Source: Bispira polyomma
Taxonomy: Eukaryota
Direction: 5' to 3'
NCBI GenBank assembly: GCA_965649765.1
Contig: OZ287752.1
Coordinates: 3,286,001-3,350,000, forward strand
Length of the DNA: 64,000 nt
The notes under the pieces were generated by a model. It was not told the origin of the DNA, searched no databases, and saw nothing but the letters and a program-made list of their open reading frames with translations. Positions 10,478 to 36,630 of this stretch are shown in pieces (the first letter of the stretch is position 1; every line of letters begins with the position of its first letter). A program made the position numbers and the translations under genes.

Positions 10478-10660
10478 TTTACTGTCCTGTACTCCATTAT
10501 TGTCATGTACTGTCTTTTACTCCTTTACTGTTATTTACTCCTTTACTGTTATTTACTCATTTACTGTCCTTTACTCCTTTACTGTCATTTATTGTCCATT
10601 ACTGTTGTTTATTTACTGTTTTTTACTGTTATTTACTGTTCTACACCCTGTTACTGTAGC
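10478..10660 (+). repeat. TTTACTG/TTTACTC simple repeat tract, unit 1
   Basis: Directly visible short-period repeat. Confidence 0.9.
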
Positions 10661-11974: not shown

Positions 11975-12219
11975 TTATATCCTGATATAAACATCATTTC
12001 CTTGGTGGTTAGATGTCTCTAAAAGCATTGGGTTTTCATTGACACACCGCCTGGCAACACATGCGCCACCTGGTTTGTAGTTAATTACATTGCCTTTCAC
12101 TGAACAGACCCAATCATGACACTCCCTAACCGTAGGCAAAGCCTTTGCTTGAAGATAAATGCAGTTGGAAATTTTTGATGGAGAATTCCTGCTGTAAATC
12201 AATTCATAAACACACCAGT
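11975..12219 (-). CDS. Secreted Cys-rich protein, copy 1, terminal exon (spliced CDS 573 nt, 190 aa, intact)
   Basis: ttgtactttcag|AC acceptor, then NWCVYELIYSRNSPSKISNCIYLQAKALPTVRECHDWVCSVKGNVINYKPGGACVARRCVNENPMLLETSNHQGNDVYIRI*. Confidence 0.82.
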
Positions 12220-12344
12220 CTGAAAGTACAACACAGAAATCAACAAACAAATAAATAAAAATTATTCATTTGATATAGCGCATAATGAACATCACTGTTA
12301 TCTAATGTGTTTTGACAATATTTCCCCAGCCTAGGTTTTTTCAC

Positions 12345-12592
12345 TTGTTAACCAATTGTTCAGTCTCAGATTACTCAGGTAGCATACTAGCCATGCTGCC
12401 ACATACAGCGCACAAAGAATAACACCCATTAGCGGCCAGCTACCTATTTATATACCTTGGTAGAGAGGGAAAACTTTTTGTAAAGCTCCTTGTCCAAGGG
12501 TACAATCTCCAGGCCAGCGGCAAGGTTTGAACAGGGGCTCTGATATCACTCAGATCTGACAAGTCCGACACTCTAAATGCTAGGCCACATAG
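12345..12592 (-). mobile_element. tRNA-derived SINE with CORE-like central domain in intron 2 (paralogous copies ~19030-19265 and ~29838-30078)
   Basis: The reverse strand has TGGCCTAG..TTAGAGTGTCGGACT and CCTTGGACAAGG...CTCTCTACCAAGGTATATAAATAGGTA. Same family as 38205-38480 and 40503-40680. Confidence 0.7.
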
Positions 12593-12916
12593 ACCACAAA
12601 TACGTTATTCACCTTTTGTCAATAGAAGGTGGCATTATTGTTAAGTACGTTCACTTACTTATTGACAAAAATTGATCATTGATTGTTTTAGAAACACATT
12701 AAGTTTTTTCCTATTACTTAAATATGAATAAAATTAAATTATAGTTATATATAGTATTGTGGGATTTTTAAACAAATGGGTAGACATAATACATAACATA
12801 ATACCAGAAACTATTGATGTAGAATGTTTTTGGGTGAAAGAAACAACAAATTTTTATATGTCTGGTTTGTTAAAAATGTACAGTAATTGAAAGCACCTGC
12901 TTCCCAACATACTTAC

Positions 12917-13033
12917 TTAGCTTTTCATAAACTGGAAGTGTGGAGGCAGAAAAGACAACAGGTTGCAGTTGATTATTTGTTACATGAGATACAATAAATG
13001 GGATCCCCAGGCACAGAATACAGTTGTCTTCAG
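12917..13033 (-). CDS. Secreted Cys-rich protein, copy 1, coding exon 2
   Basis: cacacag|CTGAAG...CTAA|gtaagt. 117 nt, phase 1-1, reading AEDNCILCLGIPFIVSHVTNNQLQPVVFSASTLPVYEKL. Confidence 0.82.
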
Positions 13034-13719
13034 CTGTGTGTATATATGAACAGGATATTCTAGAATTTAAATATCAAGAATCATAAGCAGTAAAAGAAAA
13101 GCTTAATATTTGATTAGTGTTGCTCCCTTTTATTGTGTCCAACACTAACACAAACTTGGTAAATGTCATTGCTATGAAGACCCAAGTTTAAAATTATTTC
13201 ATAGATGGACAAACAGATTAAGCTTTATAGATGGATAACTTGTAAATAGAACCCACGGTAATGTAAGGTGATTCACCCATCATCAGCAGGTTAAGTGCTT
13301 GTCATACATTTTTTGTGGAAGCATTCTTGTTTCTATTAACTCAAAATTAAAAGTCAAGTACACAAGAGACTATTTTATAGAACACAAATTTTACGTTTTG
13401 AGCTATAAGTTTGGATTTAGGTGTACGATTCTGTATATTCAACTTTCTTTTAGTGATTTCTTGTTTTACTGCTACCTGCAGATGCTGCTTTCATACTACT
13501 GATGTAGTTTTACAATATTATATCGAAACAATCAAATATGTTATTATATACAAGTTTTACTATTTTGAACTAATATTTTAGCCATTTCATGAAATGTTAC
13601 CCATGCAAAACCACCAGTAATGTTACATGCATGTATCAAAGCTGTGCTATTTTTAACTGTAGAGATATATTTATATAGTGCCTCCACAACACTAACTCTC
13701 GAGCTCCCAGTTAGTGTAA

Positions 13720-14016
13720 GCCCCGGTCCCACACTAGTGGCATTGAGAGGCTATTCGGAACGGTACACATTTCATCTGGTACCTGCAGTACTCTTATCTT
13801 GGCTGTATCAATACCTGGTCTGACGATGGCGATGGATTTGAGCATGTTCAAAATTTTGGCTCCACCAAAGCGGAAACAGGTGGTAAAATGCCTCTGCCCA
13901 TTTCCGGGAAGTACCAAATTTCCGTTCCTGCAATCGTGTCTTTCAGACTATTTCCACCTATTTCCATGTGTATCTGTTTCACTATTGTAACTCTTCCTCT
14001 AGTTTGTGACCGGGGC
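13720..14016. mobile_element. Harbinger-type MITE in intron 1 (paralogues 20396-20702 and a longer 31227-31753)
   Basis: TIRs GCCCCGGTCCCACACTAG / CTAGTTTGTGACCGGGGC with TAA-like flanks. Confidence 0.75.
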
Positions 14017-14512
14017 ATAATACTATATTCTAGTGGAACTGCAATATTGCACAAGTATTAGTGTGTTACTAAAGTGAAACCAAAAGTAAGTTTGAAAAGG
14101 ACATTGGTCTGTTTGCTCTACTGTGTTACAATGAATTTTTAAAATATGTGTAAATTACGTAACAAACAATATGTAACACGTTCTTGCTTGGTCCCTTCTA
14201 TACAAATGCCGAATGATCCATTTAGGGTATTAAAGCAAATTATACAAAAGTTGTATGCTATAGACAGTTCCATTACTCATTCGATAATGTAAAACATTAC
14301 TTTCAACATTCTACAATTACAAAAAACTTGCATGATATGCCATAAACAGTTTCAAAGCACATTTAATAAATGATATAAAAGTATTGCACAAAATAAGGAC
14401 AGTTATTTAGGTTAATCTTAATGTTTTTACTTAAAAATAAAAAAAACTTATAGTACATATATATTACTGAAAAAATTTGAAAGTTACAAGATGTGTCATA
14501 TTATTATCAAAC

Positions 14513-14723
14513 CTGTGTACACAAAATGGTAACATGCATATATCTGATTACAGAGCTTTCCACAAGTCATCGAATCCTGGCACTGATTCGGCTTGTGATA
14601 CATACAAGGCAGAGTGTTGGAAAGATCTGACACAGAAGTCACTTTAATTTTCCCCGAAACAACCTTCATTGCCCAAAAAAACACAAAGGTCTCTAGCAAT
14701 ACTTGAAATGTATACAATTCCAT
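14513..14723 (-). CDS. Secreted Cys-rich PAN/apple-like protein, copy 1, coding exon 1 (signal peptide and most of the PAN-like motif)
   Basis: MELYTFQVLLETFVFFWAMKVVSG-KIKV...PCMYHKPNQCQDSMTCGKLCNQIYACYHFVYT. 211 nt with a G|GT phase-1 donor conserved in all three copies. Confidence 0.82.
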
Positions 14724-16789
14724 GCTGGCCTAACAATTGAATAATATCAATTATATCCTGTTTGTATAGACAATTTCTTCGGTTTTAAATTGATGAAGTT
14801 CTCTTAAAAACTGTAAAGGGGTATATCATTTGCTGGACAATGCTACTGTGAACACGACAATATTCTAAATGGAACACATCACGACAATGTATGTTTTATG
14901 TGAATTATGAAAAAGATACATGGTGACTGTCATTGTATTCTCTGTTTGCTTCACTCATGATTGCTGCTAGAAATAAATACCTTGCTATTTAACAAATATA
15001 TTTTTTTTTCTAAAAATAGACTATTGTTACTGAAATGTAACAATACAAAGATCTAAATGAAGATAGTTGATTGTTAAAATTTTCATGACCTTTCAACAAT
15101 TAACTAATGCAAAACACACGATTGGTAGAAATAATTGACATTATAATAACACCTTAAAATGAATTATGAAATGGAGTAAATACCAGTTGGCCGCCAAAGG
15201 TAAAACAAGTTAGTGTCATTCTGTGGATATTGCAAAAAGTGAAATCATTTCAAGTTCTATTCTGTTGGTTAGGTTTTGTAATAATAGTATAAAATTACAA
15301 CGACTGAAGTAATAAAATAAAATAATATATCCAGACAATATGTTTATTTTTTGTCTCACTGTGATCTATTCCAAAAGTTTATAAAAATGTGTGAATCAAC
15401 AATACATTGAAAATATAACTGGTATGGTTCAGTATACAATTCTGTGAGTGTGGTGAAAGGTAAAATTTGAGCTTTGGTACACGAATTGCAACTCAAAACT
15501 GGAAATCAAAAATTGAATTTTTAAAAGTAACAGTTTCTTAAAGGTGTTTTTATGTCAATTATATAAAATTATAAGGGTTTAAAAGCTATGAAAAGTTGTG
15601 TTCTGATTTTTCACCAGAAATGTAAGACATTTATGTTTGTAATATTTTTTGAGAGTGGAGCCCCCTTTACAAAATCCTAGATCCGCCTATGTAAGTGCTC
15701 ATACTAGCCACTAATTGTGTGAGTGTATCTGGACATAGGTTGGGATTGAACCCAGGTCCCCTGTGTTCCTAAGAAGTGTGTTACTCAATAACTCACTGTA
15801 ACAGTGCTATACATAACAATACAATACCTACACTCAAGGACAATATGACATAATAATTAGTAAGGGTAGTAGTACTAAAACGAATTAAAAGGCCTAATAA
15901 AGACAATCAAGTAAAATAACTTTTAAAACAATTCGACAATTGAAAAAATTATTTATATGTATGCTGATTAATTAGTAGAACCTGTATGTCTTGCAAACTT
16001 CAAGATACCCTTTATTCAAATGTCAGGAAACACAGATGGAAATCAGGTCCACTAAATGTAATACACTACCAGAAAATACAAGGCTCTAATGTTCTATTGT
16101 ACATTATATTTAAATGAGTACAGGAATAATGTATACCCATAAAAACATAAAAACAAATCAGCTGTTTATATATGTTCTGTTAAGATTAGTCTCTTGTTGG
16201 CGTCTGTGGCATAGTGGTTACATAATTTTATTGAGACTTAATCAGAGTGGTCCTTGGCCTGAAAATTTGTCCTCTGTGTAACATGCTTCATACAGCGATA
16301 TTCCTCTCCAAGTAGGTGTATAAATGCCCACTTCATTGCTTTTGGGTATTAGTCTGTGTGCCATAAGTTGTACAGGGAGCAGAGAGTGAACATTTGGATG
16401 ACAAAGTAGAAGAATCTAAGCCAAAAGTAAGTTAGATGTGACTTTATTAGGACTCGTATCCACACTATAAATCTACACATCTACACGGTTTTTCGAGAAT
16501 GGTCACTGCCCATAAATCAGCTCTTTATAATGGTTAGTTTTAACTGAGATGAGATGATCCATATCTACCATCAATGATGTACACTGAAGCTGTGGGATCT
16601 GAAGCAGCAGTTTAGCTAAAGTAAAATTGATGCCAAGAATATGTAAATGTAAAATGTAGCTTACTGCTAAATTTAGTCCTACTGCAAGTGGGATTATTTG
16701 ACATGCTTGAGACCACCTACATTGTCAGACAACACATGATAATTGATTTGATTAAGACTACTGAGAAACTTGAAAGTCACTTTAGCACA

Positions 16790-17110
16790 TTACTATCCTT
16801 TACTCCTTTACTGTCATGTACGCCTTTATTGTCTTTTACATCGTTACTGTCCTTTACGGCCAATTATTCCTTTACTGTCCTTTACTCCTTTACTGTTATT
16901 TACTCCTTTTATGTCATTTTACTGCCATTTACTCATTTACTGCCCTTTACTCATTTACTGTCCTTTACTCCTATACTGCCATTTACTCATTTATTGTCTT
17001 TTACTCCTTTACTGTCATTTACTCTTTTACTGTCATTTACTGTCCTTTACTGTCATTTTCTGTCCTTTACTGTTATTTACTTCTTTACTGTTCTTCACTC
17101 TTTTACTGTA
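16790..17110 (+). repeat. TTTACTG/TTTACTC simple repeat tract, unit 2 (longest)
   Basis: Directly visible, ~320 bp. Confidence 0.9.
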
Positions 17111-18723
17111 GCTGTTGGTAAGATTTACTTTTGATTCTCTATTGTCATATTATAATACTAATGAGGAATAGTTGACAAAAGTTTTAATGAAAAGCACAGT
17201 TGAAACATGTTAGTACTGCTTTAAAGTTGTAGATGGGGCCGTTATGAAATGCTTGGAGTCTCTGTGGTCTGCGTTTGACAGAGTTGCTCTGGGAATTACA
17301 AGGTCTCCAGTTCTCCTGGTGACACAATAATTATGATTTGAGGATAACATTATCTGGCAAGATCACACATACTTAAGATAACAATTGGCTCTGTATTTAG
17401 TTCATAATTAATGGCTTATCGGCTCTGATTTTTGTGGCAAGCATCAACAGGACCATTAAAATTCCACAGTGAACTAAGTCGGCCAGTCGTAATGTATTAT
17501 TTGCATGGCTTCTGAATAGTTGTCAGTTTTATGATGGGATGCAATCATTGAAGCAGTTCGAAAATGCCATATTGATGAACAAATAACAATAATAATCCTT
17601 GAAGCATTTAAAAGGGTCATATTAATGCGAACATCCTCTACGGTGCTCATATCCAAAAAGGTCAAGTCCAAGGTCAATCAAAATGGCTGTTATCAAAAAC
17701 TTTGTGACCAGGAGAGAAATTAATAAGGGGGGGTGGGGTGGGGTGGGGTTGGTGGGATTGGTAAGTCAATCTGAAAGGTATGTTTTAAGTTCGCTTTTGA
17801 AACCAGTGATTGTATCCCTTGATTTGGCGGTCTGTGAAAGCCTTAATCAAGCATAAATGGCTATATTTTGATAAATTGTATATTTTCTCAGTGCATCAAA
17901 AATGTGCTTATATGTTGATTTCATTTTCTATTTTCAAATTTTGAGCAATTACTTGAAATCAACTAATGGCCAGTGCTTACACTATTCTTATCGCCATGGA
18001 TTGACTGGTAAATGATGACTACCCTACAGTATATATTTTGGTTACAAGAATATCATTTGAAAATATAAACATACACCAGAAGAAAAATTTATTAATATAT
18101 ATTAGTACAAGCTTTTTAAATTTGAAAAACAAATTTTAATCTACCCTAATGTGTAAAAATTTGTTAAAGCTAAAAGTTTAAATTCTGAAAGAATCATCAT
18201 TTTGAAATAACCACCCTGTCGAAATGGCCCTCTGCACCAAGTTTCATTCTGAAATCACCCAAGTCATTTTAGTGGTAAGATATGTGTCACTTATCTGGGT
18301 TAAGGAGTCGATTTAGTGCTAGTTATTGTGATGGAAGTAACTCCACTATGTGTATGTAATAATAGTTATAATTACATCTGATTGCCTCATGTTTAACCTT
18401 ATGTTCTGAGTTCAGTCTTTCAGAATGTTTATGAACAGCTTAAGTATGTTATAGCTAAAATGTTCTTTCTTGTAAAAAGTTAATTGTCTGTTCAATGTTG
18501 TGACTATTTTTGTGATCATATTTTTTTTGCGATCATATCTCTAATATACATTGCTCTTTGTGAGAATTTTAATTCATGATACTTTATCACTGACAGAAGA
18601 TACTACATTGTGTCTTTATTACAGATGATATACTTGCAGAGCTCAGGATTATTATGTGCAGCTTATATCCTGATATAAACATCATTTCCTTGGTGGTTAG
18701 AGGTCTCTAAAAGCATTGGGTTT

Positions 18724-18908
18724 TCATTGACCACACCGCCTGGCAACACATGCGCCACCTGGTTTGTAGTTAATTACATTGCCTTTCACTGAACAGGCCC
18801 AATTTTGACACTCCCTAACTGTAGGAAAATCCTTTGCTTGAAGATAAATGCAGTTGGAAATTTTTGATGGGGAATTCCTGCTGTAAATCAGCTCAAAAAC
18901 ACACCAGT
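18724..18908 (-). CDS. Secreted Cys-rich protein, copy 2, terminal exon truncated by a +1 frameshift (ancestral stop at 18663)
   Basis: Plus strand GACCACACC versus GACACACC in copies 1 and 3. It reads ...ACVARRCGQ*, losing 20 C-terminal residues after the last Cys. Confidence 0.7.
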
Positions 18909-19592
18909 CTGAAAGTACAGCACAGAAATCAACAAACAAATAATAATTATTCATTTGATATAGCGCGTTATGAACATCACTGTTATCTAATATGTTTTGA
19001 CATTATTACCCCAGCCTGGATTTTTCCACTTGTTAACCAATTGTTCAGTCTCAGATTTCTCAGGTAGCATACTAGTTATGCTGCCACATACAGCGCACAA
19101 AGAATAACACCCATTAGCGGCCAGCTACCTATTTATATACCTTGGTAGAGAGGGAAAACTTTTTGTAAAGCTCCTTGTCCAAGGGTACAATCTCCAGGCC
19201 AGTAGCAAGGTTTGAACAGGGGCTCTGATATCACTCAGATCCGACAGGCCAGGCTAGGCCACATAGACCACAAATACATTATTAACCTTTTGTCAATAGA
19301 AGGTGGCGTTATTGTTAAATACATTCACTTATTTATTGACAAAAATTGAGTGTTGATTGTTTTGGAAACACATTATGTTTTTCCTAATACTTAAATATGA
19401 ATAAAATTGAATTATAGTTATATATAGTATTGTGGGTTTTTTATACAAATAGGTAGACATAATACACAACATAATACCAGAAACTATTGATGCAGAATGT
19501 TTTTAGGTGAAAGAAACAACAAATTTTTATATGTCTGGCTTGTTGAAAAAAATGTACAGTAATTTAAAGCACCAGCTCCCCAACATACTTAC

Positions 19593-19709
19593 TTAGCTTT
19601 TCATAGACTGGAAGTGTTGAGGCAGAAAAGACAACAGGTTGCAGGTGATCATTTGTTACACGAGATACAATAAATGGGATCCCCAGGCACAGAATACAGT
19701 TGTCTTCAG
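19593..19709 (-). CDS. Secreted Cys-rich protein, copy 2, coding exon 2
   Basis: 117 nt with AG/GT intact, reading AEDNCILCLGIPFIVSRVTNDHLQPVVFSASTLPVYEKL. Confidence 0.75.
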
Positions 19710-21182
19710 CTGTGTGTATATATGAACAGGATATTCTAGAATTTAAATATCAAGAATCATAAGCAGTAAAAGAAAAGCTTAATATTTGATTAGTGTTGCT
19801 CCCTTTTATTGTGTCCAACACTAACACAAACTTGGTAAATGTCATTGCTATTAAGACCCAAGTTTAAAATTATTTCATAGATGGACAAACAGATTAAACT
19901 TTGCAGATGGATAACTTGCAAATAGAACCCACGGTAATGTAAGGTGATGCACCCATCATCAGCAGGTTAAGTGCTTGTCATACATTTTTTGTGTAAGCAT
20001 TCTTGTTTCTATTAACCCAAAATTAAAAGTCAAGTACACAAGAGACTGTTTTATAGGACACAAATTTTATGTTTTGAGCTATAAGTTTGGATTTTGGTGT
20101 ACGATCCTGTGTATTCAACTTTCTTTCAGTGATTTCTTGTTTTACCGCTACCTGCAGATGCTGCTTTCATACTACTGATGTAGTTTTACAATATTATATC
20201 GAAACAATCAAATATGTTATTATATACAAGTTTTACTATTTTGAACTAATATTTTAGCCATTTCATGAAATGTTACCCATGCAAAACCACTAGTAATGTT
20301 ACATGCATGTATCAAAGCTGTGCTATTTTTAACTGTAGAGATATATTTATATAGTGCCTCCACAACACTAACTCTCGAGCTCCCAGTTAGTGTAAGCCCC
20401 GGTCCAACATTAGTGGCATTGAGAGGCGGTTCGGAACGGTATACATATCATCTGGTACCTGCACTCTTATCTTGACTCTATCAATACCTGGTCTGATGAT
20501 GGTGATGGATTTGAGCATGTTCAAAATTTTGGCTCCACCAAAGCGGAAACAGGTGGTAAAATGCCTCTGCCCATATCCGGGAAGTACCAAATTTGACTAT
20601 AAGTCTTCCGTTCCTGCAATCGTGTGTTTCAGAATATTTCCACCTATTTCCATGTGTATCTGTTTCACTATTGTAACTCTTCCTCTAGTTTGTGATCGGG
20701 GCATAATACTATATTCTAGTGGAACTGCAATATTGCACAAGTATTAGTGTGTTACTAAAGTGAAACCAAAAGTAAGTTTGAAAAGGACATTGGTCTGTTT
20801 GCTCTACTGTGTTACAATGAATTTTCAAAATATGTGTAAATTACGTAACAAACAATATGTAACACGTTCTTGCTTGGTCCCTTCTATACAAATACCGAAT
20901 GATTTATTTAGAGTATTAAAGCAAAAGTTGTATGCTATAGACAGTTCCATAACTCATTCGATAATGTAAAACATCACTTTCAACATTCTACAATTACAAA
21001 AAACGTGCATGATATGCCATAAACAGTTTCAAAGCACGTTCAATAAATGATAAAAAGGTATTACACAAAATAAGGACAGTTATTTATGTTAATGTTTTTA
21101 CTTAAAAATAAAAAAACTTATAGTACATATATATTACTGAAAAAATGTAAAAGTTACAAAATGTGTCATATAATTATCAAAC

Positions 21183-21393
21183 CTGTGTACACAAAATGGT
21201 AACATGCATATATCTGATTACAGAGCTTTCCACAAGTCATCGAATCCTGGCACTGATTCGGCTTGTGATACATACAAGGCAGAGTGTTGGAAAGATCTGA
21301 CACAGAAGTCACTTTAATTTTCCCCGAAACAACCTTCATTGCCCAACAAAACACAAAGGTCTCTAGCAATACTTGAAATGTATACAATTCCAT
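21183..21393 (-). CDS. Secreted Cys-rich protein, copy 2, coding exon 1
   Basis: One amino-acid difference from copy 1 (F16C), with the same donor. Confidence 0.75.
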
Positions 21394-23707
21394 GCTGGCC
21401 TAACAATTGAATAATATCAATTATATCATGTTTGTGTAGACAATTTCTTCGGTTTTAAATTGATAAAGTTCTCTTAAAAACTGTAAAGGGGTATATCATT
21501 TGCTGGACAATGTTACTGTGAAGACGTCAATATTCTAAATTGAACACATCACTACAATGTGTGTATAATGTGAATTATGAAAAAGATACATGGTGACTGT
21601 CATTATATTCTCTGTTTGCTTCATTTATGATTGCTGCTAGAAATAAATACCTTGCTATTTAACAAATATATTTTTTTTCTAAAAATAGACTATTGTTACT
21701 GAAATATAACAATACAAAGATCTAAATAAAGATAGTTAAAATTTTCATGACCTTTCAACAATTAACTAATGCAAAACACACGATTGGTAGAAATAATTGA
21801 CAATATAATAACACCTTAAAATGAATTATGAAATGGAGTAAATACCAGTTGGCTGCCAAGGGTAAACAATTTAGTGTCATTCTGTGGATATTGCAAAAAC
21901 ATGAAATCATTTTAATTTCTATTCTGTTAATTAGGTTTCGTGATAATAGTATAAAATTACTGAAGTAATAAAATAAAATAATATATCAAGACAATGTGGT
22001 TTATTTTCTGTCTAACTGTGATCTATTCCAAAAGTTTATAAAAATGTGTGAATCAACAATACATTGAAAATATAACTGGTATGTTTCAGTATACAATTCT
22101 GTGAGTATGGTGAAAGTTAAAATTTGAGCTTTGGTACATGAATTGCAATTCAAAACTGGAAATCAAAAATTGAATTTTTAAAAGTAACAGTTTCTTAAAG
22201 GTGTTTTTTTGTCATTTATATAAAATTATAAGGATTTAAAAGCTATGAAAAGTTGTGTTCTGATTTTTCACCAGAAATGTAAGACATTTATGTTTGTAAT
22301 ATTTTTTGAGAGTGGAGCCCCCTTTACAAAATCCTGGATCCTACTCATGCTCATACTAGCCACTAATTGTGTGAGAGTATCTGGTCGCATAGGTTGGGAT
22401 CGAACCCAGGTCCCCTGTGTTCCTAAGGAGTGTGTTACTCAATAACTTACTGTAACAGTGCTATACATAACAATACAATACCTACACTCAAGGACAATAT
22501 GATATAATAATTAGTGAGAGTAGTAGTACTAAAACGAATTAAAAGGCCTAATAAAGACAATCAATTAGAATAACTTTTAAAACAATTCGGCAATTGAAAA
22601 AATTATTTATATTCAAAGAAAAGTGAAGCACAGAGTACAATAGCACACATAATACCACTGATTGACAATACAAAATTACTTAGACATTTTTTGCACATTT
22701 CCAATAAATAAGGAAATACCATATATTTACTATAACATGGATTTGTATATAATACATGTTCAAATTATGCACATATTTTAAGGGACTCTACTGGAATGTT
22801 CTTCTTCTTGTTGACTGTGTAAAGTTTTTACATTTTATGATCACATTTGGTGCTAATCTTTAGTTAAGATTTGTCTGTATGCTGATTAATTAGTACATCC
22901 TTTTTGTCTTGCAAACTTCAAGATACCATTTATTCAAATGTCAGGAAACACAGATGGAAATCAGGTCCACTAAATGTAATACACTACCAGAAAATACAAG
23001 GCTCTAATGTTCTATTGTACATTATATTTAAATGAGTACAGGAATGATGTATACCCATAAAAACATTAAAACAAATCTGCTGTTTATATATGTTCTGTTA
23101 AAATTAGTCTCTTGTTGGCGTTGGTGGCATGGTGGTTACATCACTTGATTGACACTTTATCAGAGTGGTCCTAGGCCTGAAAATTGTTCCTCTGTGTAAC
23201 ATGCTTCATACAGTGATATTCGTCTCCAAGTAGGTGTATATATGCCCACCTCTTTGCTTTTGGGTATTAGTCTGTGTGCCATAAGTTGCAGAGGCAGCTG
23301 AGATTTAACATTTGGATGACAAAGTAGAAGAATCCAAGCCAAAAGTAAGTTAGATGTGACTTTATTAGGACTCGTATCCATACTATAAATGTATGCATCT
23401 ACACAGTTTTTCGAGAAAGGTCACTAACCATAAATCAGTTCTTTATAATGGTCAGTTCTAACTGAGATGAGTTGATCCATATCTACAATCAATGATGTAC
23501 ACTGAAGCTGTGGGATCTGAAGCAGCAGTTTAGCTAAAGTACTCTAGATGGCAAGAATATCTAAATGTAAAATGTAGTTTACTGCTAAATTTAGTCCTAC
23601 TGCAAGTGGGATTATTTGACATGCTTGAGACCACCTACATTGTCAGACAACACATGTTAATTGATTTGATTAAGACTACTGAGGAAATTGAAAGTCACTT
23701 TAGCACA

Positions 23708-23860
23708 TTACTATCCTTTACTCCTTTACTGTCATGTACGCCTTTATTGTCTTTTAGACCGTTACTGTCCTTTACGGCCAATTAGTCCTTTACTGTCATT
23801 TACTCCTTTACTGTCATTTACTGACTTACTGTCATTTACTCATTTACTGTCATTTACTGT
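23708..23860 (+). repeat. TTTACTG/TTTACTC simple repeat tract, unit 3
   Basis: Directly visible, ~150 bp. Confidence 0.9.
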
Positions 23861-24130
23861 ATTTAGGTCATAATTAATGGCTTATCTGTTCTTATTTTGT
23901 ACTTTAGATGGTACCAAGCATCACAGGACCAGTAAAATTCCACAGTGAACTAAGTCGGCCAGTCGTAATGTATTATTTGCATGGGTTCTGAATGGTTGTC
24001 AGTTTTTTTTTTTAGTTGGGATACAATTATTGAAGCATTTAGAAAGTGGCACATTGATAAACAAATAATAATAATCCTTGAAGCATTTAAAATGGGTAAT
24101 ATTAAAGCAAACATCCTCTAAGGTGCTCAT

Positions 24131-27100
24131 ATTGTATTGTATTGTACATTTTTAACGCACCTTATTGATGCTAGGCATTTCCTAAGGCGCAACATTAGAA
24201 TCGATCAGCCAGTAGAAAAATTCATAAACAATAGCCAGGTCGTAAGGATGGATGGGTCAGCACCCTGAAAAGATAGGTTTTGAGCTTTTTCCTAAATCCA
24301 TAAAGTGTTTCAAGCATTCAAAGTTCAACTGGAAGGTGGTTCCGTAGAAGAGGGGTGGCGACCAGGAAGGCTATTGATCCGACCCTCCATACTAGTTTTT
24401 AGAGGAAACAAAGAGTCTCTTTCCCCTTTTAAGGTTGCTGAAGGAGAGTTTGTAGCAACCTAGTGAGGCTGTTGAGAGACAACAGCTTTAAAGGTAGTTA
24501 CATGCATTTTAAGAAGAATTTAATAGTGAATTGGAAGTCAATGGAGTTGCTTGAGGTATGGAGTTACATAATTTTGAATTTGAATTTGGATATTTAACGT
24601 CCACTCTAGTACCTTTTAGTAGGTTTTATTGGGACGGGTAGTTGGAAATGCTGGAGGAAACACTGCATACAGTCGGTCAAGGTTCTGCAGAGAAACCAGC
24701 GGCCCACAGTAAGGAACTACCACCTTTCCCACATAGGCATCGACGGGATTCGAACTCACGCCGCCAAGAGGTGAGAGACCAGTGATTGTGAAGCGCAATG
24801 CTTGCTAACCACTAGGCCACCGCGGCCCCGGAGCTACATAAGTATGGATAGCCAAATGAAAGATGACTCTACATAGATCATTTTGAATGGACTTCAACTT
24901 GTTTATATGGGACTTATTAGCTCCAAAAAGGAGAGAATTACAATAGTCAAGGCGGCTACTCACAAGAGCGTTGGCCACAGTGATAGTAGTATCTAGTGAC
25001 AGATAATTTCTGATTCTTTTGAGGTCCTGAATGTGATAGTAGCAGAAGTGTCGGATGTTGTAATGCGAGGAAGAAATAAAAAAGCAGGATCAAGAGTGAC
25101 ACCTTGGTTTTTGATCTGTTCTGAAGGTGTAATCTCATTGCCCAGCAGTGTGATTGGGAAAAGTGATCTTAAGTATACACTGTGTTTCCTGTTGCCAATT
25201 AGGATGAATTCCGTTTTGTCTGGGTTTAATTTCAGTTTGGAGTAGTTCATCCACGCCTGAACTCAGAAGAGACAGTTGGCAAGTAAGTGAAGGTTGTTCC
25301 AGCATTGTCAGGGTTTCGTGGGAGATAGTTTTGAGTGTCATCAGCATACATGTGATGTTTAACATTGTGATTATTGAGAGCAAGGTACGATTTAATCCAG
25401 TCAAGGACAGTACCATCAAGACCGAACCACTGTTTTAGGGTGTCAAAGAGAAAGCCATGGTATCAAAAGCTGCAGAGAGATTGAGAAGGGTGGTGAGGGC
25501 CACAGTTACATTACGATCCAAGGCAAGGTAATGTCGTCACTGATTGAAAGTAGGACACTCTCCGTGGAGTGAAATTTTCTGTCGGCAGATTAGTAGCAGT
25601 TAGCTAGGTTTTGTTTATTAAGGTGGTCATGAATTTCTTTAGCAACAGCTTTCTCTATTAGTTTAGATACAAAGCTGAGATTAGAGACTGGTCTATAGTT
25701 TTTCAGGCCTTTTTTGTCAAGGCCTGGTTTTTTCAGCAGGGGGGTGACATATGCGGTTTTAAACCAAGAGGGAAATATACCATCTCTAAGCGATAAATTT
25801 ATGATGTTGGTGACAGGAGTTATGAGAATGTCAAGGCATTCTGTTAGAACAGCGGCAAGGATCCAGTTCACACGATTTGTTGGAGTTGGTTTTTTTTGTT
25901 TGAGAACTTCGTTTTCCGAAAGTGAGTTAAAATGTAGCAGATTTGAAACTATATAGCCTGGGGATAGTGGAGAGAACTTTAGCCTTGTTGAAAAACCTTC
26001 ACGAATTTTAGTTATTTTTCCAATGAAAAATTTGCCTACAAGAAATGTGAGGCAACTTGTTCTGCTGTGCTGTGAAGTATTTTATTTATGGAGCTCCATA
26101 ACCTTTTTGGTGAGTTTGATCGAATCATAGTGTGGTTTTTTGGCTCTGGTCATCAGGGCATTGAAGTGGTTTGTGGCGATTCTGTAGCACTTACTATCAA
26201 GTGTTGATTTTGTGCTCCGCCATAGCTGCTTAAGTTGATGCTTACGCCTTTTAGCATCCTTGATGTCTGGGTTGGTCCATTCAGGGGTGTCAAAAAGTGG
26301 AAGAGTTTTAGAAACCCAAGGAGCATGACTGTTAAGGATAGAGGACAAGGTATGGTTATATTGTAGACTTAGACTATGTCCATTTTTACAAGGGTGTTTA
26401 ATGAGGCGAAATGCAAGTATGTCATCCCAAAATTTGAGAAAGTTAATTTTTCTGATGTTGCGGAATCTAATTACTTTAGGTTTGTGTGACAGTGGTTTAG
26501 GCAGCATAAGATTTGCAAAAATGGCAAGATGGTTGGACACCCCGTCGGTAACCATATATCCTGTATCAGTTAGTGGAGATAAGTGGGAGTGGAAATAAAC
26601 TGTTTGAATTAAAAAATATTCAATAGGCTGTAGAAATCTTCGGTTGTCGTGTTATTGATATCGATTTTGATATTGAAGTCACCAAGTACAATAGATTCCA
26701 ATGAGAGGAGGTTAATTGATTCAAGGAAACTAGAAAAATCTTGATTGAAAGCAGATATGGAAGGGCTCGGTGGACGATAGAGGCAGGAAACTAAAAATGA
26801 TTGAGATCCATTTGAAATTTTGCAGGTAATACATTCAAAAGATGGAGAGTCATCAGTATTGAGAATTTTACTTGAAAGGCTACTCTTGACAAAGATAACA
26901 ACACCCCCCCCTCCTGCTTGACAGGCCTAGGTGAGTGGTGCAATCTATAACCTGAAGGTGTGATATCAGAAAGGAATGCATAAATATCCTTAGGGCTGTG
27001 CCAGGTCCCAGACACACAGGCCACATCAAGGTCGTGGGTTTCAATAAGGGCGCTGACTGAAGGCGCCTTACTGCGGATGAATCTGGCATTGAAGGCACCA

Positions 27101-27500
27101 ATTTTTAGATTTGATTGGAAAGGACCAGGGTTTATTTGACCATCGCCACAGAGAGCGGTAAGTAAGGGAATCAAAGAGTTTTTGACACGGGGGTTTAGAT
27201 GCCGAAAGAGGTAGATCTGAAACAGAGGAAGGAAGAGTTTATGTTGTCTAATGGTGGTAGAAAAGAATGGCAGATTTTGATTTGAAAGGGATATTGTTGG
27301 TAAAAATTTGGACAAGAGTTCCAAAAAAGGATCCTAGTGATGGCTAGAATAAAGCAAGGCAGCAGTATTTTCAACATGATTGAAGACAGGAGAAAGTACA
27401 TACAGATGTGTTTTGAGCCTTTTTCTGAAACCCATGATGCTTGTCCCAGTTCGAAGACTGGTAGGGAGGCTACTTCACTCAGCAGGTGCTGCAACTAAGA
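24131..27500 (-). mobile_element. L2/CR1-clade LINE, degenerate ORF2 (APE endonuclease and RT), inserted in unit 3
   Basis: INPGP..LKIGAFNAR, YRPPS and LGDFNI (endonuclease); FKTAYVTPLLKKPGLD...NYRPVSNLSFVSKLIEK and MNYSKLKLNPDKTEFILIG (RT). (TACAA)n tail at 24131. Absent from units 1 and 2. Confidence 0.92.
24572..24829 (-). mobile_element. Young tRNA-derived SINE nested in the LINE
   Basis: GGGGCCGCGGTGGCCTAGTGGTTAG head, GAGTTCGAATCCC B-box and CCAAATTCAAATT tail. TSD GGAG(T/C)TACATAA. Confidence 0.92.
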
Positions 27501-27589
27501 ATGATTTTGAACCAGCTTGTTTTTTTGGTAGGAAACCAGAGGTGGAGAGACGATTGCCTCTGGTGAGATTGCTGACAAACAGCATAGAT

Positions 27590-28245
27590 GATAAATAGGC
27601 AGGTTGATGTACATGAACTGTCTTAAAAATCAGGACAATTACCTTAAATTTAATACGAAACTCAATGTAATTGTTTCAGCAGGGGAATAGTGTGAGTGCG
27701 AGGGCCAGTATGGTTTACTATTCTGCACAGGCTATTTTGTATTTTCTGTAGTTTGCTTATTGGCCCTTTCCAATCCCATATAGTAGTGAGTTACAGTAAT
27801 CTAGTCGAATTGATACCAGGGCATTTGCCACTGCAATGGTATTTTTAGGGTAAATGTCATCGAATACTGCGAAAGGCACGGATGTTGCCGTAGCAGGAAT
27901 GACAGATATTGTTTTTTAAAGGTGAAGTCAGAGTCAAAAGTAGGTTCTTCGCACTGTCAGCAGGAGCAGTTCTGTTACCAAGGAGAGTAGCAGGGAAGAA
28001 TTCAAGAACCTTTTTCCTCTGATGTTTGGAGCCAATAAGTAGGAATTCTGTCTTGTCACGGTTGAGTTTCAATTTTGAATTACTCATCCAAAATTCAATC
28101 GAAGACAGGCAGCTAGCAAGCTGTTCCAGGATCTAAGAACAATTTTTGGGAGTGAGGGAGCAGTAGATCTGTGTGTCATCTGCAAAGAAGTGATAGCTAA
28201 CATTGTGGTGTGAGGATATTATACTTGCAAGGGGAGTAGTATACA
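27590..28245 (-). mobile_element. Second L2/CR1 RT fragment
   Basis: YHFFADDTQIY, WMSNSKLKLNRDKTEFLLIGS and ANALVSIRLDYCNSLL. Confidence 0.85.
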
Positions 28246-28497
28246 TATATATAGTAATGTTATTGCATAAAATGAGACATAAACGTTGGTTTTAAAAAAA
28301 ATTATCTATTTATTTAATAAATATATCCAAAAAGGTCAAGTCTAAGGTCAAGCAAAACCATTGTTATCAAAAAGTGTGTGACCAGGGAAGAAATTAAAGA
28401 GGGGGGTAGGCCAATCTGAAAAAGGTGTGTTTTAAGTTGGCTTCTGAAACCAATGATTGTATCTTGTGATTTGACAGTCTGTGGAAGTTTAAATGAA

Positions 28498-28660
28498 TTT
28501 GAATTTAAATTTGGATATTTAACGTCCACTCTAGAACCTTTTAGTAGGTTATATTGGGACGGATAGTTGGACATGCTGGAGGAAACACTGCATACAATCG
28601 GTCAAGGTTCCGCAGAGAAACCAGCAGCCAACAGTAAGGAACTACCACCTTTCCCACATA
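28498..28660 (-). mobile_element. 5'-truncated copy of the young SINE
   Basis: Matches the 3' half of 48166-48418, flanked by a perfect TSD GGAAGTTTAAATGAA. Confidence 0.88.
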
Positions 28661-29469
28661 GGAAGTTTAAATGAAACGTAAATGGCTGAATGTTTACAAA
28701 TTTGTTATTTATAGTATATTTTATCACTGCATCAATTGTCTTAAGAAAAAAAATGTGATTATATGTTGATTTAATTATCTTTTTTCATATTTTGAGCAAT
28801 TACTTGTTGAAATCAATTAATGGCCAGTGGTCACATTTCTTATCGCCATGGATTGACTGGTAAACCATGACTACACCACAGCATATATTATGGTTACAAG
28901 AATATCATTTGAAAATATAAACATACACAAGAAGAAAATTTTATTATCATATATTACAACTTTTTAAACTTGAAAAACAAATTTTAATCTACCCTGATGT
29001 GTAAAAATTTGTTAAAGCTAAAAGATTCGAAAAGAATCATCATTTTAAAATAACCACACTGTCGAAATGGCCCTCTGCACCAAGTTTGATTCTGAAATCA
29101 CCAAAGTTATTTTTAGTGGTAACATATATGACACTCGTCTGGTATTAAATGGTGGATTCACTGTGCTAGTTATTGTGATGGAAGTAACTCAACTGTGTGT
29201 AGGTAATAATAAATATAACCCATCTGATTGCCTCATGTTCAACCTTATGTTCAGAGTTCACTCTTTGAGAATTTTATAGACAGCTTAAGTATGTCATAGC
29301 TAAAATGTTCTTTCTTGTAAAATGTTGATGGGGGTGATCATATCTCTAATATACATTGATCTAGCTGAGAATTTTAATTCATGATACTTTATCACTAACA
29401 GAAGATACTATATTATCACTTTATATCACAGATGATATACTTGTAGAGATCAAGATTATAACATGCAGG

Positions 29470-29714
29470 TTATATTCTAATATAAACATCATTTCCTTGG
29501 TGGTAAGAGGTCTCTGTAAGCATTGGGTTTTCATTGACACACCGCCTGGCAACACATACGCCACCTGGTTTGTAGTTAATTACATTGCCTTTGACTAAAC
29601 AGACCCAATCATGACACTCCCTAACTGTAGGAAATTTCTTTCCTTGAAGAAGAATGCACTTGGAAATTTTTGATGGGGAATTCCTGCTGTAAATCAGCTT
29701 AAAAACACACCAGT
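29470..29714 (-). CDS. Secreted Cys-rich protein, copy 3, terminal exon (intact, 190 aa total)
   Basis: 245 nt, reading NWCVFKLIYSRNSPSKISKCILLQGKKFPTVRECHDWVCLVKGNVINYKPGGVCVARRCVNENPMLTETSYHQGNDVYIRI*. Confidence 0.82.
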
Positions 29715-30372
29715 CTGAAAATACAGCATAGAAATCAACAAACAAATAATAATTATTCATTTGATATAGCGCATTATGAACATCACTGTTATCCAATGTG
29801 TTTTGACATTATTACCCCAGCCTGGGTTCTTCCACTTGTTAACCAATTGTTCAGTATCAGATCCCTCAGGACGCATACTAGCCATGCTGCCACATACAGC
29901 ACACAAAGATTAACACCCATTGGCGGCCAACTACCCATTGATACACTTGGGTAGAGAGGGACAACTTTGTGTAAAGTACCTTTTCCAAGGGTACAATTTC
30001 CAGGGCTACAGTGAAGATTGAACTGGGTTCTTTGAGATCACTCAGATCCAAAGTCCGACACTAACCACTAGGTCACAGAGATCACAAATACATTATTTAC
30101 CTTTTGTCAATAGAAGGCGCCATTGCTGTCAACTACCTTCACATACTTATTGACAAAAATTGATCATTGATTGTTTTAGAAAGACAATATGTTGTTCCTA
30201 ATACTTAAATATGAATAAAATTGAATTATGGGATTTTGTGGGATTTTTAAACTAACAGTTACACATAATAAACAATGTTTTCAGGTGAAAGGAACTACTA
30301 GGAGTTTTATATGTCTGGTCTGTTTTAAAAAATACACAATAATTTAAAGCATCAACACCCCAACATACTCAC

Positions 30373-30489
30373 TTAGCTTTTCATAGACTGGAAGTGTGGA
30401 GGCAGAAAAAACAACAGGTTGCAGGTGATCTTTTGTTACATGAGATACAATAAATGGGTCCCCCAGGCACAGAATACAGTTGTCTTCAG
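30373..30489 (-). CDS. Secreted Cys-rich protein, copy 3, coding exon 2
   Basis: 117 nt with donor GTGAGT, reading AEDNCILCLGDPFIVSHVTKDHLQPVVFSASTLPVYEKL. Confidence 0.82.
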
Positions 30490-32208
30490 CTGTGTGTATA
30501 TGAACGGAATATTCTCGAATTCAAATAAAAACTACCATAGGGCACAGTCAAAGGAAAGCTTAATATTTGATTAGTGTTGCTCCCTTTCATTGCGTCCAAC
30601 TCTTACACAAAATTGTTCAATGTTATTTTGCTTGAAGACCCAATTTTGAAATTAATTTATGTTACACAAAATGGTTAAATTATATTTTTTGATAGAGCCA
30701 ATTGTGAAATAAATTTATAGATAGATGAATATATTAAGCTTTATAGATGGATAACTTGCAAATAGAACCCATTGTAATGTAAGGTGATGTACCCGTCATC
30801 AGCAGATTAAGTGCTTGTCAGAAATATTTTCTGTAAGCATTATTGTTTCTAATAACCCTCCATTAATAAATTAAAAGTCGAGTACACAAGATGCAATTTG
30901 AAACAACATAAATTTTACGTTTGGAACTATAAGTTGGGATTGAGGTGTTCACTGTGTATCCGACTTTATTTTAATAATTCATTGTTTCACTGGTACCCGA
31001 GATGCTGCTATTATAATACTGATGTGGTTTTACAATTTTACATCTAAACTAATCAAATATTTCAATATAAACACAATTTACTATTTTTAAATATTATTTT
31101 AACCATTTCATAAACTGTTACCCATATAAAACCACCAGTAGTGTTACATGCATGTATTTATACCCGTAGAGTTATATTGACATAGTGCCTCCACAACACT
31201 AACTCTCGGGCAACCAGTTAGTTTAAGCCCTGGCCTCACATTAGTGGTATGGCAAGGTGGCTCAGGACGATACATATGTCGCCTGGTACCTGCAGTACTC
31301 TTATCTTGACTGTATCAATACCTGGTCTGACCACATGCAAAATCCCATAACCCTTCGTCACTGGTCGTGTCCGGCGATAGTTTTGAACATGTTCAAAATT
31401 TCTGCTCCACCAAAGAGGAAACGGGTGGTAAACTGCCTCCGCCCATTTCCGGAAAGTACAGAATTCGAATGTAAGTCTTCCGTTCCTGCAATCGTGTGTT
31501 TCAGACTATTTCCACCCATTTCCGTGTATATTTGTTTCACTACTGTAACTTTTCCTCTAGTTTCCGTCTGTTTCCGCCTATTTCTGAGTATTTCCGTTTT
31601 ACTACTGTAAGTCTATTGTAGTAGCATCATCTTTTCCTGTTTGTAAAACTTATCTGTTTCAAGTTTCAGAGGGTATATTTTGATTAGTTGGAACAGCCGA
31701 TTCAATGGGTGGCAAGACAACTTACAGTATTTTCTAGTTTTGTTTGACCGGGCATAATACTAAATTTCTATATTCTAGTGGAACTGCAATACTGCACAAG
31801 TATTAGTATGTTGTTAATCAAGTGAAATCAAAAGTAACTTAAAGAAGGACATTTGTCTTTTTGCTCTACTGTGTGACATTGAATTTAAAAAAAATATGTG
31901 TAAATTATGTAACAAAAAAATATGTAACATGTTCCCGCTTGGTCCTTTCTATAAGAACGCCAAATGATTTATTTAAAGTATTGAAATAAATTATACAAAA
32001 GTTGAATGCTATAAACAGTTCCATAACACATTCAATTATTGTAAGCACATTACTTTCAACATTCTACAATTACAAAGAACTTGTATGATAAGCTATAAAC
32101 AGTTTCGAAGTGCATTCGATAAATTATGAAAGAAGTATTAAAAAAAATAAGGACAGATATTACTGAAAAACTGTAAAAATTATAAGATGTGTCATATAAT
32201 TATCAAAC

Positions 32209-32419
32209 CTGTGTAGACATAATGGTAACATGCATATATCTGATGACAGAGCCTCCCACAAGACATCGAAGCATAGCACCCGATCGGCTTGTGATATGTA
32301 CAAGACAGAGTGTTGGATAGATCTGACACAGAAGTCACTTTAATTTTCCCAAAAACAACCTTTATTGCCCCACAAAAGGACAAAATACCTAGCAATACTT
32401 GCAATGTATACAATTCCAT
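32209..32419 (-). CDS. Secreted Cys-rich protein, copy 3, coding exon 1
   Basis: MELYTLQVLLGILSFCGAIKVVFG-KIKV...SCTYHKPIGCYASMSCGRLCHQIYACYHYVYT. 211 nt. Confidence 0.82.
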
Positions 32420-36390: not shown

Positions 36391-36630
36391 CTTATAAATT
36401 TGTCGCTCGATTTTTAATGATCAGCTCCTGATTCGGAGCTGACGTCGATCAGGTGTATCCTACTTCTGTTTTCTTAGGTTTGAATTTTTTCGGATGACGG
36501 AAACAGATGACGGAATTGGAACCAAAATGGTTAGGTCTATTTGCCTCTTTATGATCAATTAAATTCTTTTGACACCTTGTTCTCAAGTTACTATTTCTCC
36601 CAGTATCAAATGTAGCTGGCTTTTTGAGGC

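What the first reader, a model, noticed from the sequence alone, without database searches (positions are those of the whole stretch)
11975..32419. Hidden tandem family of three spliced genes for a small secreted 13-Cys protein (PAN/apple-like motif plus an unassigned 6-Cys module)
Seen in the sequence: three minus-strand exons of 211, 117 and 245 nt with canonical phase-compatible splice sites in all three repeat units, joining into a 190-aa ORF. Exon lengths and all 13 mature-region cysteines are kept while the flanking introns have many indels. Established knowledge: C-x3-C-x5-C-x2-F-x-Y-x5-C-x-L (CGKLCNQIYACYHFVYTAEDNCIL) fits the PAN/apple spacing used in protein and carbohydrate binding. 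Inference: the N-terminus is a signal peptide, the C-terminal module (WC...C...EC.DW.C...NVINY....C.ARRC) may be a divergent second PAN-like fold, and the family may act in recognition, immunity, mucus or shell matrix. I do not recognise a named family. This is the best candidate for an undescribed system in the window.
Basis: partly seen in the sequence, partly recalled or inferred. Interest (0 to 1): 0.8.

Follow-up and report, generated by a model that had tools for sequence, protein, structure and literature searches.

The report
Tandem secreted double PAN-domain genes
Three neighbouring three-exon genes (two intact, one frameshifted) encode small cysteine-rich, probably secreted proteins whose second half is predicted with high confidence to fold as a PAN/apple binding domain. 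They belong to a family of over 20 loci that Pfam does not detect, so this is a real family but a divergent branch of a well-known domain superfamily, not a new system.

Summary
The three minus-strand 3-exon units exist at the stated coordinates, all with GT..AG introns in phase 1/1. Copies A and C give 190-aa ORFs with 13 mature-region Cys. Copy B has one extra G in exon 3 (246 nt, not 245), which stops the ORF at 170 aa.

The family is larger than reported. At least 9 close 3-exon copies lie on another contig (C10) and about 10 more distant ones elsewhere. Contigs from another organism keep the same exon order and intron phases at 41% identity. Twelve Cys are invariant, and dN/dS is 0.4-0.7 (Fisher p down to 7e-8).

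The "unassigned 6-Cys module" (exon 3) gives an AlphaFold model at pLDDT 91.6. Its best structural matches are all PAN/apple domains (Z 8.6). Pfam finds nothing.

The N-terminal module carries the PAN Cys motif, but it spans two exons.

No RNA runs were available, so splicing and expression are untested.

Earlier scan notes list other PAN-like genes in this genome; a sequence look-up found none of this family.

Verdict: a real, divergent double-PAN secreted family of moderate interest.

The parts
14513..14723 (-). Gene A exon 1 (211 nt): ATG, signal-peptide-like residues 1-24, and the first half of the N-terminal Cys module. GT donor at 14512-14511.
12917..13033 (-). Gene A exon 2 (117 nt, phase 1 to 1): second half of the N-terminal module.
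11975..12219 (-). Gene A exon 3 (245 nt): the whole C-terminal 6-Cys module, predicted to be a PAN/apple fold, then TAA.
11927..11932 (-). AATAAA polyadenylation-type signal 43 nt after the stop of gene A. Gene B has the same signal at 18615-18620.
21183..21393 (-). Gene B exon 1 (211 nt, 99.5% identical to A).
19593..19709 (-). Gene B exon 2 (117 nt).
18663..18908 (-). Gene B exon 3 (246 nt). An extra G at 18731/18732 shifts the frame to a premature TGA at 18726-18724. The product is 170 aa, keeps all Cys, and lacks the last two predicted strands.
32209..32419 (-). Gene C exon 1 (211 nt, 85% identical to A).
30373..30489 (-). Gene C exon 2 (117 nt).
29470..29714 (-). Gene C exon 3 (245 nt). 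The ORF is an intact 190 aa.
9905..32852 (.). Extent of the duplicated array by self-comparison. Copy spacing is about 6.7 kb (A to B) and about 11 kb (B to C).
12300..12570 (.). Very high-copy interspersed repeat inside intron 2 of gene A (summed contig word depth above 30,000, against about 50 in the flanks). Not part of the gene product.
26082..27324 (-). LINE-type remnant (sub-threshold Exo_endo_phos hit) between copies B and C. It accounts for part of the longer spacing.

Best explanation
These are three tandem paralogues, two intact and one recently disabled, of a lineage-restricted gene family. Each gene has three exons. The product has an N-terminal signal peptide and a mature protein of about 166 aa (about 18.7 kDa, pI about 8-9), built from two disulfide-rich modules with six invariant Cys each.

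Shown: the C-terminal module, entirely in exon 3, is predicted with high confidence to adopt the PAN/apple fold (a helix packed on an antiparallel sheet).

Inferred: the N-terminal module (exons 1 and 2) is also PAN-like. It carries the canonical C-x3-C-x5-C...C core motif.

Inferred function: the protein is secreted and acts as a non-catalytic binding protein for a glycan or protein ligand, as in the double-apple lectin SML-2, the apple domains of MIC4, or leech anti-platelet protein. The family grows by tandem duplication while exposed loops diverge and the Cys scaffold stays fixed.

My confidence by step:
- Real coding genes: about 0.9.
- C-module is a PAN fold: about 0.9.
- Secreted: about 0.75.
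- N-module is PAN: about 0.6.
- Ligand-binding or recognition role: about 0.5.
For: Gene reality:
- Identical exon architecture with GT..AG introns in the three window copies.
- The same architecture in 6 modelled copies on C10, where the only exon length changes are in-frame (+6, +15 and +18 nt, -3 nt).
- The same exon order, intron positions and phases in two loci of another organism (L015, L016) at 41% aa identity.
- 12 Cys are invariant across all 11 models.
- Non-synonymous change is below synonymous change. A vs C10_1: pN 0.16, pS 0.33, p 8.6e-5. A vs L016: p 7e-8.
- No exon indels against 28 intron indel events between A and C.
- Each unit has its own ATG, stop and AATAAA.

Fold of the C-module:
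- AlphaFold2 on a 16-sequence alignment gave pLDDT 91.6 and pTM 0.83.
- In VIA-align against 48,161 chains, ranks 1-22 and 24-25 are PAN/apple-type domains. Plasma kallikrein apple 6o1g: Z 8.6, rmsd 2.8 over 72 of 80 residues. FXI 7qox: 8.6. SML-2 lectin 2yil: 8.4. TgMIC4-A5 2ll4: 8.4. Plasminogen 4a5t: 8.3. Also MANEC, HGF-N, Wsc1 and LAPP.
- Foldseek's top hits are the same families, but at E of 0.1 or worse.
- ESM Atlas structures carrying PAN_1, MANEC or WSC match at TM 0.63-0.72; the single best row (0.76) is a C-type lectin cluster.
- Language-model features are nearest to PAN clusters at 0.93.

N-module:
- The exact PAN core spacing is present.
- Distant paralogues on C9 carry their N-module in one exon. 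Their best Pfam hits are PAN_1 (20.5 bits against a gathering score of 21.4) and PAN_4 (E 8e-4 and 2.6e-3).
- A local hhalign of the family N-module against those paralogues puts the Cys core in register (P 0.003).

Secretion:
- Every copy has a hydrophobic 12-mer (Kyte-Doolittle 1.9-3.2) at residues 8-19, or 16-27 in L015 and L016. It is followed by V-S-G, V-F-G, A-L-G or I-L-G.
Against: - No RNA evidence. The only runs found were DNA contigs and showed no splice joints, so expression, splicing and the transcript ends are unverified.
- Pfam gives no hit at all for the window's exons, even at E up to 10. A profile against PDB sequences is also blank.
- The C-module lacks the third core Cys of canonical PAN and has C-x4-C instead of C-x3-C. 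Its disulfide pairing could not be read from the model.
- The N-module and C-module show no detectable similarity to each other (hhalign probability below 1%).
- The exon-1 half-domain folded alone gave pLDDT 63, which is uninformative.
- Z values of 7-8 are common best scores for small domains (note). The argument therefore rests on the consistency of the hit list rather than on Z alone.
- Within the window trio, dN/dS is not significantly below 1, and B vs C is 1.05.
- Some copies are decaying. B is frameshifted, C10_4 has an AT donor, and several C10 loci carry stops.
Confidence: 0.7

Rival explanations
1. The N-terminal module is not a PAN domain. It is an unrelated small disulfide-rich module that happens to share the C-x3-C-x5-C spacing, so the protein would be one PAN-fold domain plus a novel Cys module.
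For: - No Pfam hit for exons 1 or 2.
- hhalign of the N-module against the C-module gives probability below 1%.
- The six invariant Cys lie within only about 39 residues (C40 to C78), tighter than in canonical PAN or apple domains.
- The exon-1 model is poor, and the ESM feature score is only 0.75-0.77.
Against: - The core motif matches, including the aromatic residues after the third Cys.
- Distant paralogues with the same two-module layout have an N-module whose top Pfam hits are PAN_1, PAN_4 and PAN_2.
- That paralogue module aligns to the family N-module with the Cys in register, P 0.003.
- About 85 residues lie between the signal peptide and the C-module, which is the right size for a PAN domain.
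Confidence: 0.3
2. The window trio is a decaying, unexpressed offshoot of the C10 cluster. The copies would be young pseudogenes whose ORFs have not yet had time to break.
For: - B is already frameshifted.
- dN/dS within the trio is 0.5-1.05 and not significantly below 1.
- Exon 1 diverges as fast as the introns between A and C.
- No RNA evidence.
- There is no TATA box near the ATG.
Against: - A and C keep full ORFs, all splice sites, all 13 Cys and no exon indels at about 15% intron divergence with 28 intron indel events.
- A vs C10 copies show significant purifying selection.
- The polyadenylation signal is kept in A and B.
Confidence: 0.12
3. The hydrophobic N-terminus is an uncleaved signal anchor, so the two modules are displayed on the cell surface as a type II membrane protein rather than secreted.
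For: - The hydrophobic stretch is 14-17 residues long and is interrupted by E or K in some copies.
- No signal-peptide predictor was available.
Against: - The stretch is short for a membrane span.
- It is followed in every copy by small residues at -3 and -1.
- It starts within 8 residues of the Met in the window copies.
Confidence: 0.1
4. The three 'genes' are exon groups of one long multi-PAN gene.
For: Multi-PAN genes exist in this genome according to earlier unchecked scan notes.
Against: - Each unit starts with an ATG plus a hydrophobic leader and ends in a stop codon. In A and B an AATAAA follows 43 nt later, and in C an ATTAAA follows 92 nt after the stop.
- This pattern is conserved in the C10 copies and in the other organism.
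Confidence: 0.03

Closest known systems
Sarcocystis muris lectin SML-2 (PDB 2yil/2yio) and Toxoplasma MIC4 apple domains (2ll4, 4a5v)
   Same: These are small secreted proteins made only of tandem PAN/apple domains that bind galactose-type sugars. The exon-3 module superposes at Z 8.4 (rmsd 2.8 over 72 aa and 2.3 over 66 aa). A two-domain layout of about 18 kDa resembles SML-2.
   Different: Identity is only 11-17% and there is no sequence-level relationship. The Cys pattern differs. Sugar-binding residues were not compared. Those proteins are apicomplexan microneme proteins, whereas this is an animal-type multi-exon gene family.
Apple domains of coagulation factor XI and plasma prekallikrein (PDB 7qox, 6o1g, 5eod)
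   Same: These are the best structural matches (Z 8.6; Foldseek rank 1, probability 0.99). Like an apple domain, each module here has six Cys.
   Different: Apple domains are about 90 aa with a C1-C6 clamp joining the termini, and they occur as four repeats before a protease. Here the last Cys lies 22 residues before the C-terminus, the third core Cys is absent, there is no protease, and Pfam PAN_1 does not match.
Leech anti-platelet protein (1i8n) and saratin (2k13)
   Same: These are single small secreted invertebrate proteins with a PAN-type fold that act purely by binding (to collagen, from general knowledge). They are structural matches at Z 6.0 and 3.6.
   Different: They have one domain, not two. 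The structural scores are lower and there is no sequence similarity.
Pfam PAN clan families (PAN_1 PF00024, PAN_4 PF14295, MANEC PF07502, KIAA0319_N PF23597, WSC PF01822)
   Same: The fold and the general helix-to-strand disulfide logic are shared. Distant paralogues in the same genome reach sub-threshold PAN_1 and PAN_4 scores for the N-module and KIAA0319_N for the C-module.
   Different: No model reaches its gathering score on any family member, and the window's own exons give no hit at all. The family has its own conserved signature around the last two Cys of exon 3 and an invariant tail ending in hydrophobic-R-I.

Membership tests
PAN/apple structural superfamily | Domain of about 70-90 residues with an alpha-helix packed against a five-stranded antiparallel beta-sheet (C-terminal module) | tested here: met
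   The AF2 model has pLDDT 91.6 with strand-strand-strand-helix followed by four strands. The top hits by VIA-align (Z up to 8.6), Foldseek and the ESM Atlas are PAN, apple, MANEC or WSC domains.
PAN/apple structural superfamily | The same fold for the N-terminal module (residues about 25-110) | tested here: inconclusive
The module spans exons 1 and 2. Exon 1 folded alone gave pLDDT 63.
PAN/apple structural superfamily | Core cysteine motif C-x3-C-x5-C ... C (two disulfides tying the helix to the central strands) | tested here: inconclusive
   The N-module has the exact spacing and it is invariant in 9 sequences. The C-module has C-x4-C, lacks the third Cys and has other extra Cys. Pairing cannot be read from the tool output.
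Pfam PAN_1 / PAN_4 (sequence families) | HMM score at or above the gathering threshold | tested here: not met
   No families at E up to 10 for the 6 exon translations of window copies A and C or for the other organism's exons. The best distant paralogue scores PAN_1 20.5 bits against a cut-off of 21.4.
Apple domain in the strict sense (factor XI / prekallikrein type) | Three disulfides, C1-C6, C2-C5 and C3-C4, with C1-C6 joining the domain termini | not testable with these tools
   There are six invariant Cys per module, but model coordinates are not exposed. The last Cys of the C-module lies 22 residues before the end, which argues against a terminal clamp.
Classically secreted protein | Cleavable N-terminal signal peptide | tested here: inconclusive
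   A hydrophobic core and small residues at -3 and -1 are present in all 11 models. No SignalP-type predictor and no experiment were available.
PAN-type lectins (SML-2 / MIC4-A5) | Carbohydrate-binding site residues and measurable sugar binding | not tested
   Only fold similarity was shown.

The most novel reading that the evidence does not exclude
This would be a PAN subtype that Pfam does not detect. Its own signature would be a lost third core Cys, an extra N-terminal Cys pair, and a conserved N-Y-K-P-G-x-C-x-A-K-R-C stretch. It would have been recruited in marine invertebrates into a fast-diversifying family of soluble double-PAN recognition proteins (lectin- or opsonin-like), analogous to the C1qDC or FREP expansions. 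The variable 13th Cys (C47) would make covalent dimers. The weak but significant hit to a repeat in an ichthyosporean protein (P0008, E 4e-6) would make the subtype older than animals.
Probability: 0.2. Interest if true: 0.5.

Novelty: new variant of a known kind. Interest (0 to 1): 0.35.

Why it matters
If expressed, this adds a sizeable, tandemly expanding family of small secreted binding proteins to the repertoire of a marine animal. Standard domain annotation misses the family completely. It would therefore be labelled "uncharacterised" or left unannotated in comparative immune, adhesion or secretome surveys.

The finding also shows that the PAN/apple fold tolerates loss of one of its core cysteines.

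It does not open a new mechanism. The value is in annotation, in family definition (a new profile could be built from alignment A1), and in providing a candidate set for recognition or adhesion studies.

Tried and rejected
- **Pfam, exon by exon:** no hits.
- **Word-index protein search with exon 3:** blank. It could not have seen proteins of 190 aa in any case, because of its length window.
- **Profile and sequence searches against PDB sequences:** blank.
- **RNA evidence:** The look-up of sequencing runs returned only three DNA-contig runs from one study. Read laying showed even coverage of the introns and no joints at the predicted junctions. The joints listed there fall in the high-copy repeat at 12.3-12.6 kb. 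This says nothing about expression.
- **Big HMMER search hits:** P0001, P0005, P0010, P0011, P0013 and P0014 were rejected as composition or repeat artefacts. They are Zn-ribbon, bacterial Ig or low-complexity proteins.
- **Internal duplication, N-module against C-module:** not supported by hhalign.
- **Folding the exon-1 half-domain alone:** uninformative.
- **Literature searches for a named mollusc or bivalve PAN family:** nothing specific.
- **Species identity:** not established. I ran no further search on that question.
- Joined translations were used only inside local scripts, for counting Cys, alignments, dN/dS and two local hhalign comparisons.


Full report
**The observation**

- All six introns are GT..AG, both in phase 1.
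- Exon sizes are 211/117/245 nt in copies A and C, giving 190-aa ORFs.
- Copy B has an extra G at 18731/18732, straight after the last Cys codon. Its exon 3 is therefore 246 nt, and the frame runs into a TGA at 18726-18724.
- B thus encodes 170 aa. It keeps all its Cys but loses what the model shows as the last two beta-strands.
- A read-derived contig of run X3 shows the same +1 state when laid on copy A (insertion behind 12042).
- All 13 mature-region Cys are kept in the three copies, and the quoted PAN-type motif spans the exon 1/2 junction.
- Self-comparison puts the duplicated array at about 9.9-32.9 kb.
- A LINE-type remnant at 26.1-27.3 kb lengthens the B-to-C spacing.

**Whether the models are real genes**

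Within the trio the substitution evidence is weak.
- A vs C dN/dS is 0.66 (p 0.14) and B vs C is 1.05.
- Exon 1 diverges as fast as the introns.
- The indel pattern is informative: no exon indels against 28 intron events between A and C.

The decisive evidence lies outside the window.
- Searching the whole genome exon by exon found a second cluster on contig C10 (43.76-44.05 Mb) with the same exon order.
- Six C10 copies were modelled. Five have canonical (GT-AG or GC-AG) splice sites and intact ORFs.
- Their only exon length changes are in-frame: +6 or +15 nt in exon 1, +18 nt in exon 2 of three near-identical copies, and -3 or +6 nt in exon 3.
- One copy, C10_4, has an AT at the first donor. 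Several further loci carry stops or lack exon 1, so they are pseudogenes.
- Two loci from an ENA assembly of another organism (L015 and L016, ERZ22147071) carry exons 1-2-3 in the same order with introns at the same positions and phases. They are 41% identical to A at the protein level.
- Twelve Cys are invariant across all 11 models. The 13th (C47) is present only in the window trio and three C10 copies.
- Non-synonymous change is significantly below synonymous change between clusters and between organisms (p 8.6e-5 to 7e-8).
- Each unit has its own ATG, stop and poly(A)-type signal: AATAAA 43 nt after the stop in A and B, ATTAAA at 92 nt in C.

I conclude that these are independent protein-coding genes under moderate purifying selection.

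**What could not be checked**

They behave as genomic DNA, with even intron coverage, heterozygous haplotypes and no splice joints. Splicing, transcript ends and expression therefore remain untested.

The joined protein was not given to any search, family-scan or fold tool. Joined translations were used only in local scripts.

**Family size and range**

- A profile of the exon-3 module (A1) finds 25 matches in this genome. These are the 3 here and 9 in the main C10 cluster, plus one at C10:14.17 Mb, eight at C10:47.2-47.38 Mb (three of them on one broken locus at 47.20 Mb), three on C9 and two on C7.
- The C10:14.16 Mb member has recognisable exons 1 and 2 with a clear signal peptide.
- The 1.84-billion-protein HMMER search with exon 3 found no named or full-length relative. 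It found only ORF fragments at 35-47% identity on unannotated contigs.
- Those fragments come from four samples. One is a marine biofilm metagenome, SAMN08714533, which is listed in PMC6355793.
- The contigs are AT-rich, and the exon-3 ORFs end in the same F/I-R-I-stop.
- The family is therefore shared by at least a few marine organisms, but I could not name them or the host of the window.

**The exon-3 module**

- Pfam gives nothing for it, even at E up to 10. A profile search of PDB sequences is also blank.
- AlphaFold2 on the 16-sequence alignment gives a confident model (pLDDT 91.6, pTM 0.83), with three strands, a helix and four strands.
- An exhaustive structural comparison puts PAN/apple-type domains in ranks 1-22 and 24-25, each covering nearly the whole module:
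  - plasma kallikrein and factor XI apple domains, Z 8.6;
  - SML-2 lectin and TgMIC4-A5, Z 8.4;
  - plasminogen, Z 8.3;
  - MANEC, HGF N-domain, Wsc1, AMA1, leech anti-platelet protein and Kremen WSC at lower scores.
- Foldseek lists the same families first, although none reaches E of 0.001.
- ESM Atlas structures carrying PAN_1, MANEC or WSC match at TM 0.63-0.72; the top row (0.76) is a C-type lectin cluster.
- Language-model features sit nearest to PAN clusters (0.93).
- Z of about 8 alone is not exceptional for a small domain. The uniformity of the list is what makes the assignment firm.
- The module departs from canonical PAN. The helix Cys pair is C-x4-C, the third core Cys is replaced, and there are extra Cys at positions 2, 19 and 58.

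**The N-terminal module**

- It has the canonical C-x3-C-x5-C-x2-aromatic ... C spacing, invariant in nine sequences.
- It shows no similarity to the C-module, and no Pfam or PDB hit was found exon by exon.
- Exon 1 folded alone is uninformative.
- Two distant paralogues on C9 give indirect support. They have the same layout but carry the N-module in a single exon. Their best Pfam hits are PAN_1, PAN_4 and PAN_2, just under threshold.
- Those paralogue modules align to the family N-module with the Cys core in register (P 0.003).
- I rate PAN identity of this half at about 0.6.

**How it most likely works**

- Shown: a conserved two-module Cys scaffold; a PAN/apple fold for the second module; tandem expansion; faster change in the leader, in residues 40-54 and around 129-138 than in the scaffold.
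- Inferred: a cleaved signal peptide, from the hydrophobic core plus small -3 and -1 residues.
- Inferred: secretion of a basic protein of about 18.7 kDa.
- Inferred: a non-catalytic binding role for glycans or proteins, by analogy with PAN-only proteins whose structures are the best matches.
- The odd Cys could be free or could form a dimer. That is speculation.

**Comparison and verdict**

The family works like, and structurally belongs to, the PAN/apple superfamily. It fails the sequence membership test for every Pfam PAN family and deviates in the Cys core. I file it as a new variant of a known kind, not as an undescribed system.

Its novelty claim and the family size were off.

Interest is moderate (0.35). 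The finding is useful for annotation and as a candidate recognition family, but it is not surprising, because PAN domains are abundant and divergent in invertebrates.

Noticed in passing
G000 C10:43.76-44.05 Mb (loci L017-L029): Second and larger cluster of the same family on the plus strand. Three near-identical copies (C10_8, 9 and 10; the last two have identical CDSs) have 5-kb introns and an in-frame 18-nt insertion at the start of exon 2. One copy (C10_4, L020) has AT instead of GT at donor 1. L018 and L023 carry stops, and L022 lacks the start of exon 1.
   Followed up: partly
G000 C9:9.916-9.928 Mb (L033, L034); C10:47.26-47.38 Mb (L032); C7 (L035, L036): More distant members with a two-module layout. 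In the C9 genes the N-terminal PAN-like module lies in a single exon and scores just below Pfam PAN_1 and PAN_4 thresholds. Five evenly spaced (about 30 kb) copies lie at C10:47.26-47.38 Mb.
   Followed up: partly
P0008 (EukProt, Abeoforma whisleri, 466 aa): An ichthyosporean protein with three repeats, each ending in a module that matches the exon-3 module (E 4e-6 in a 1.8-billion-protein search). It shares the A-F-N-Y-K-P-G-x-C stretch. Pfam sees no PAN domain there either.
   Followed up: partly
window 12300-12570: An interspersed repeat in intron 2 of gene A has a summed contig word depth above 30,000, against about 50 in the flanks, and many contig junctions. It is a very abundant, SINE-sized element.
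   Followed up: no
window 14677 and 12042: Read-derived contigs laid on copy A show exactly the copy-B states (A>C at 14677, which is F16C, and the +1 insertion behind 12042). This is either cross-laying of B contigs at 95% likeness or gene conversion or allelic exchange between A and B.
   Followed up: no
window 53972-54556 (+): A 194-aa ORF matches AA_permease_C (E 1e-8). It is probably the last exon of a cationic amino-acid transporter gene.
   Followed up: no
window 36630-37282: Tandem repeat with a period of about 82 nt and about 89% identity between copies.
   Followed up: no
L038 (ENA ERZ27264458 contig): The database protein P0007 was called with TGA read as an amino acid, so the locus does not translate to it under the standard code. 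Under the standard code the exon-3-like ORF there is bounded by stops and ends in F-R-I-stop like the family.
   Followed up: yes
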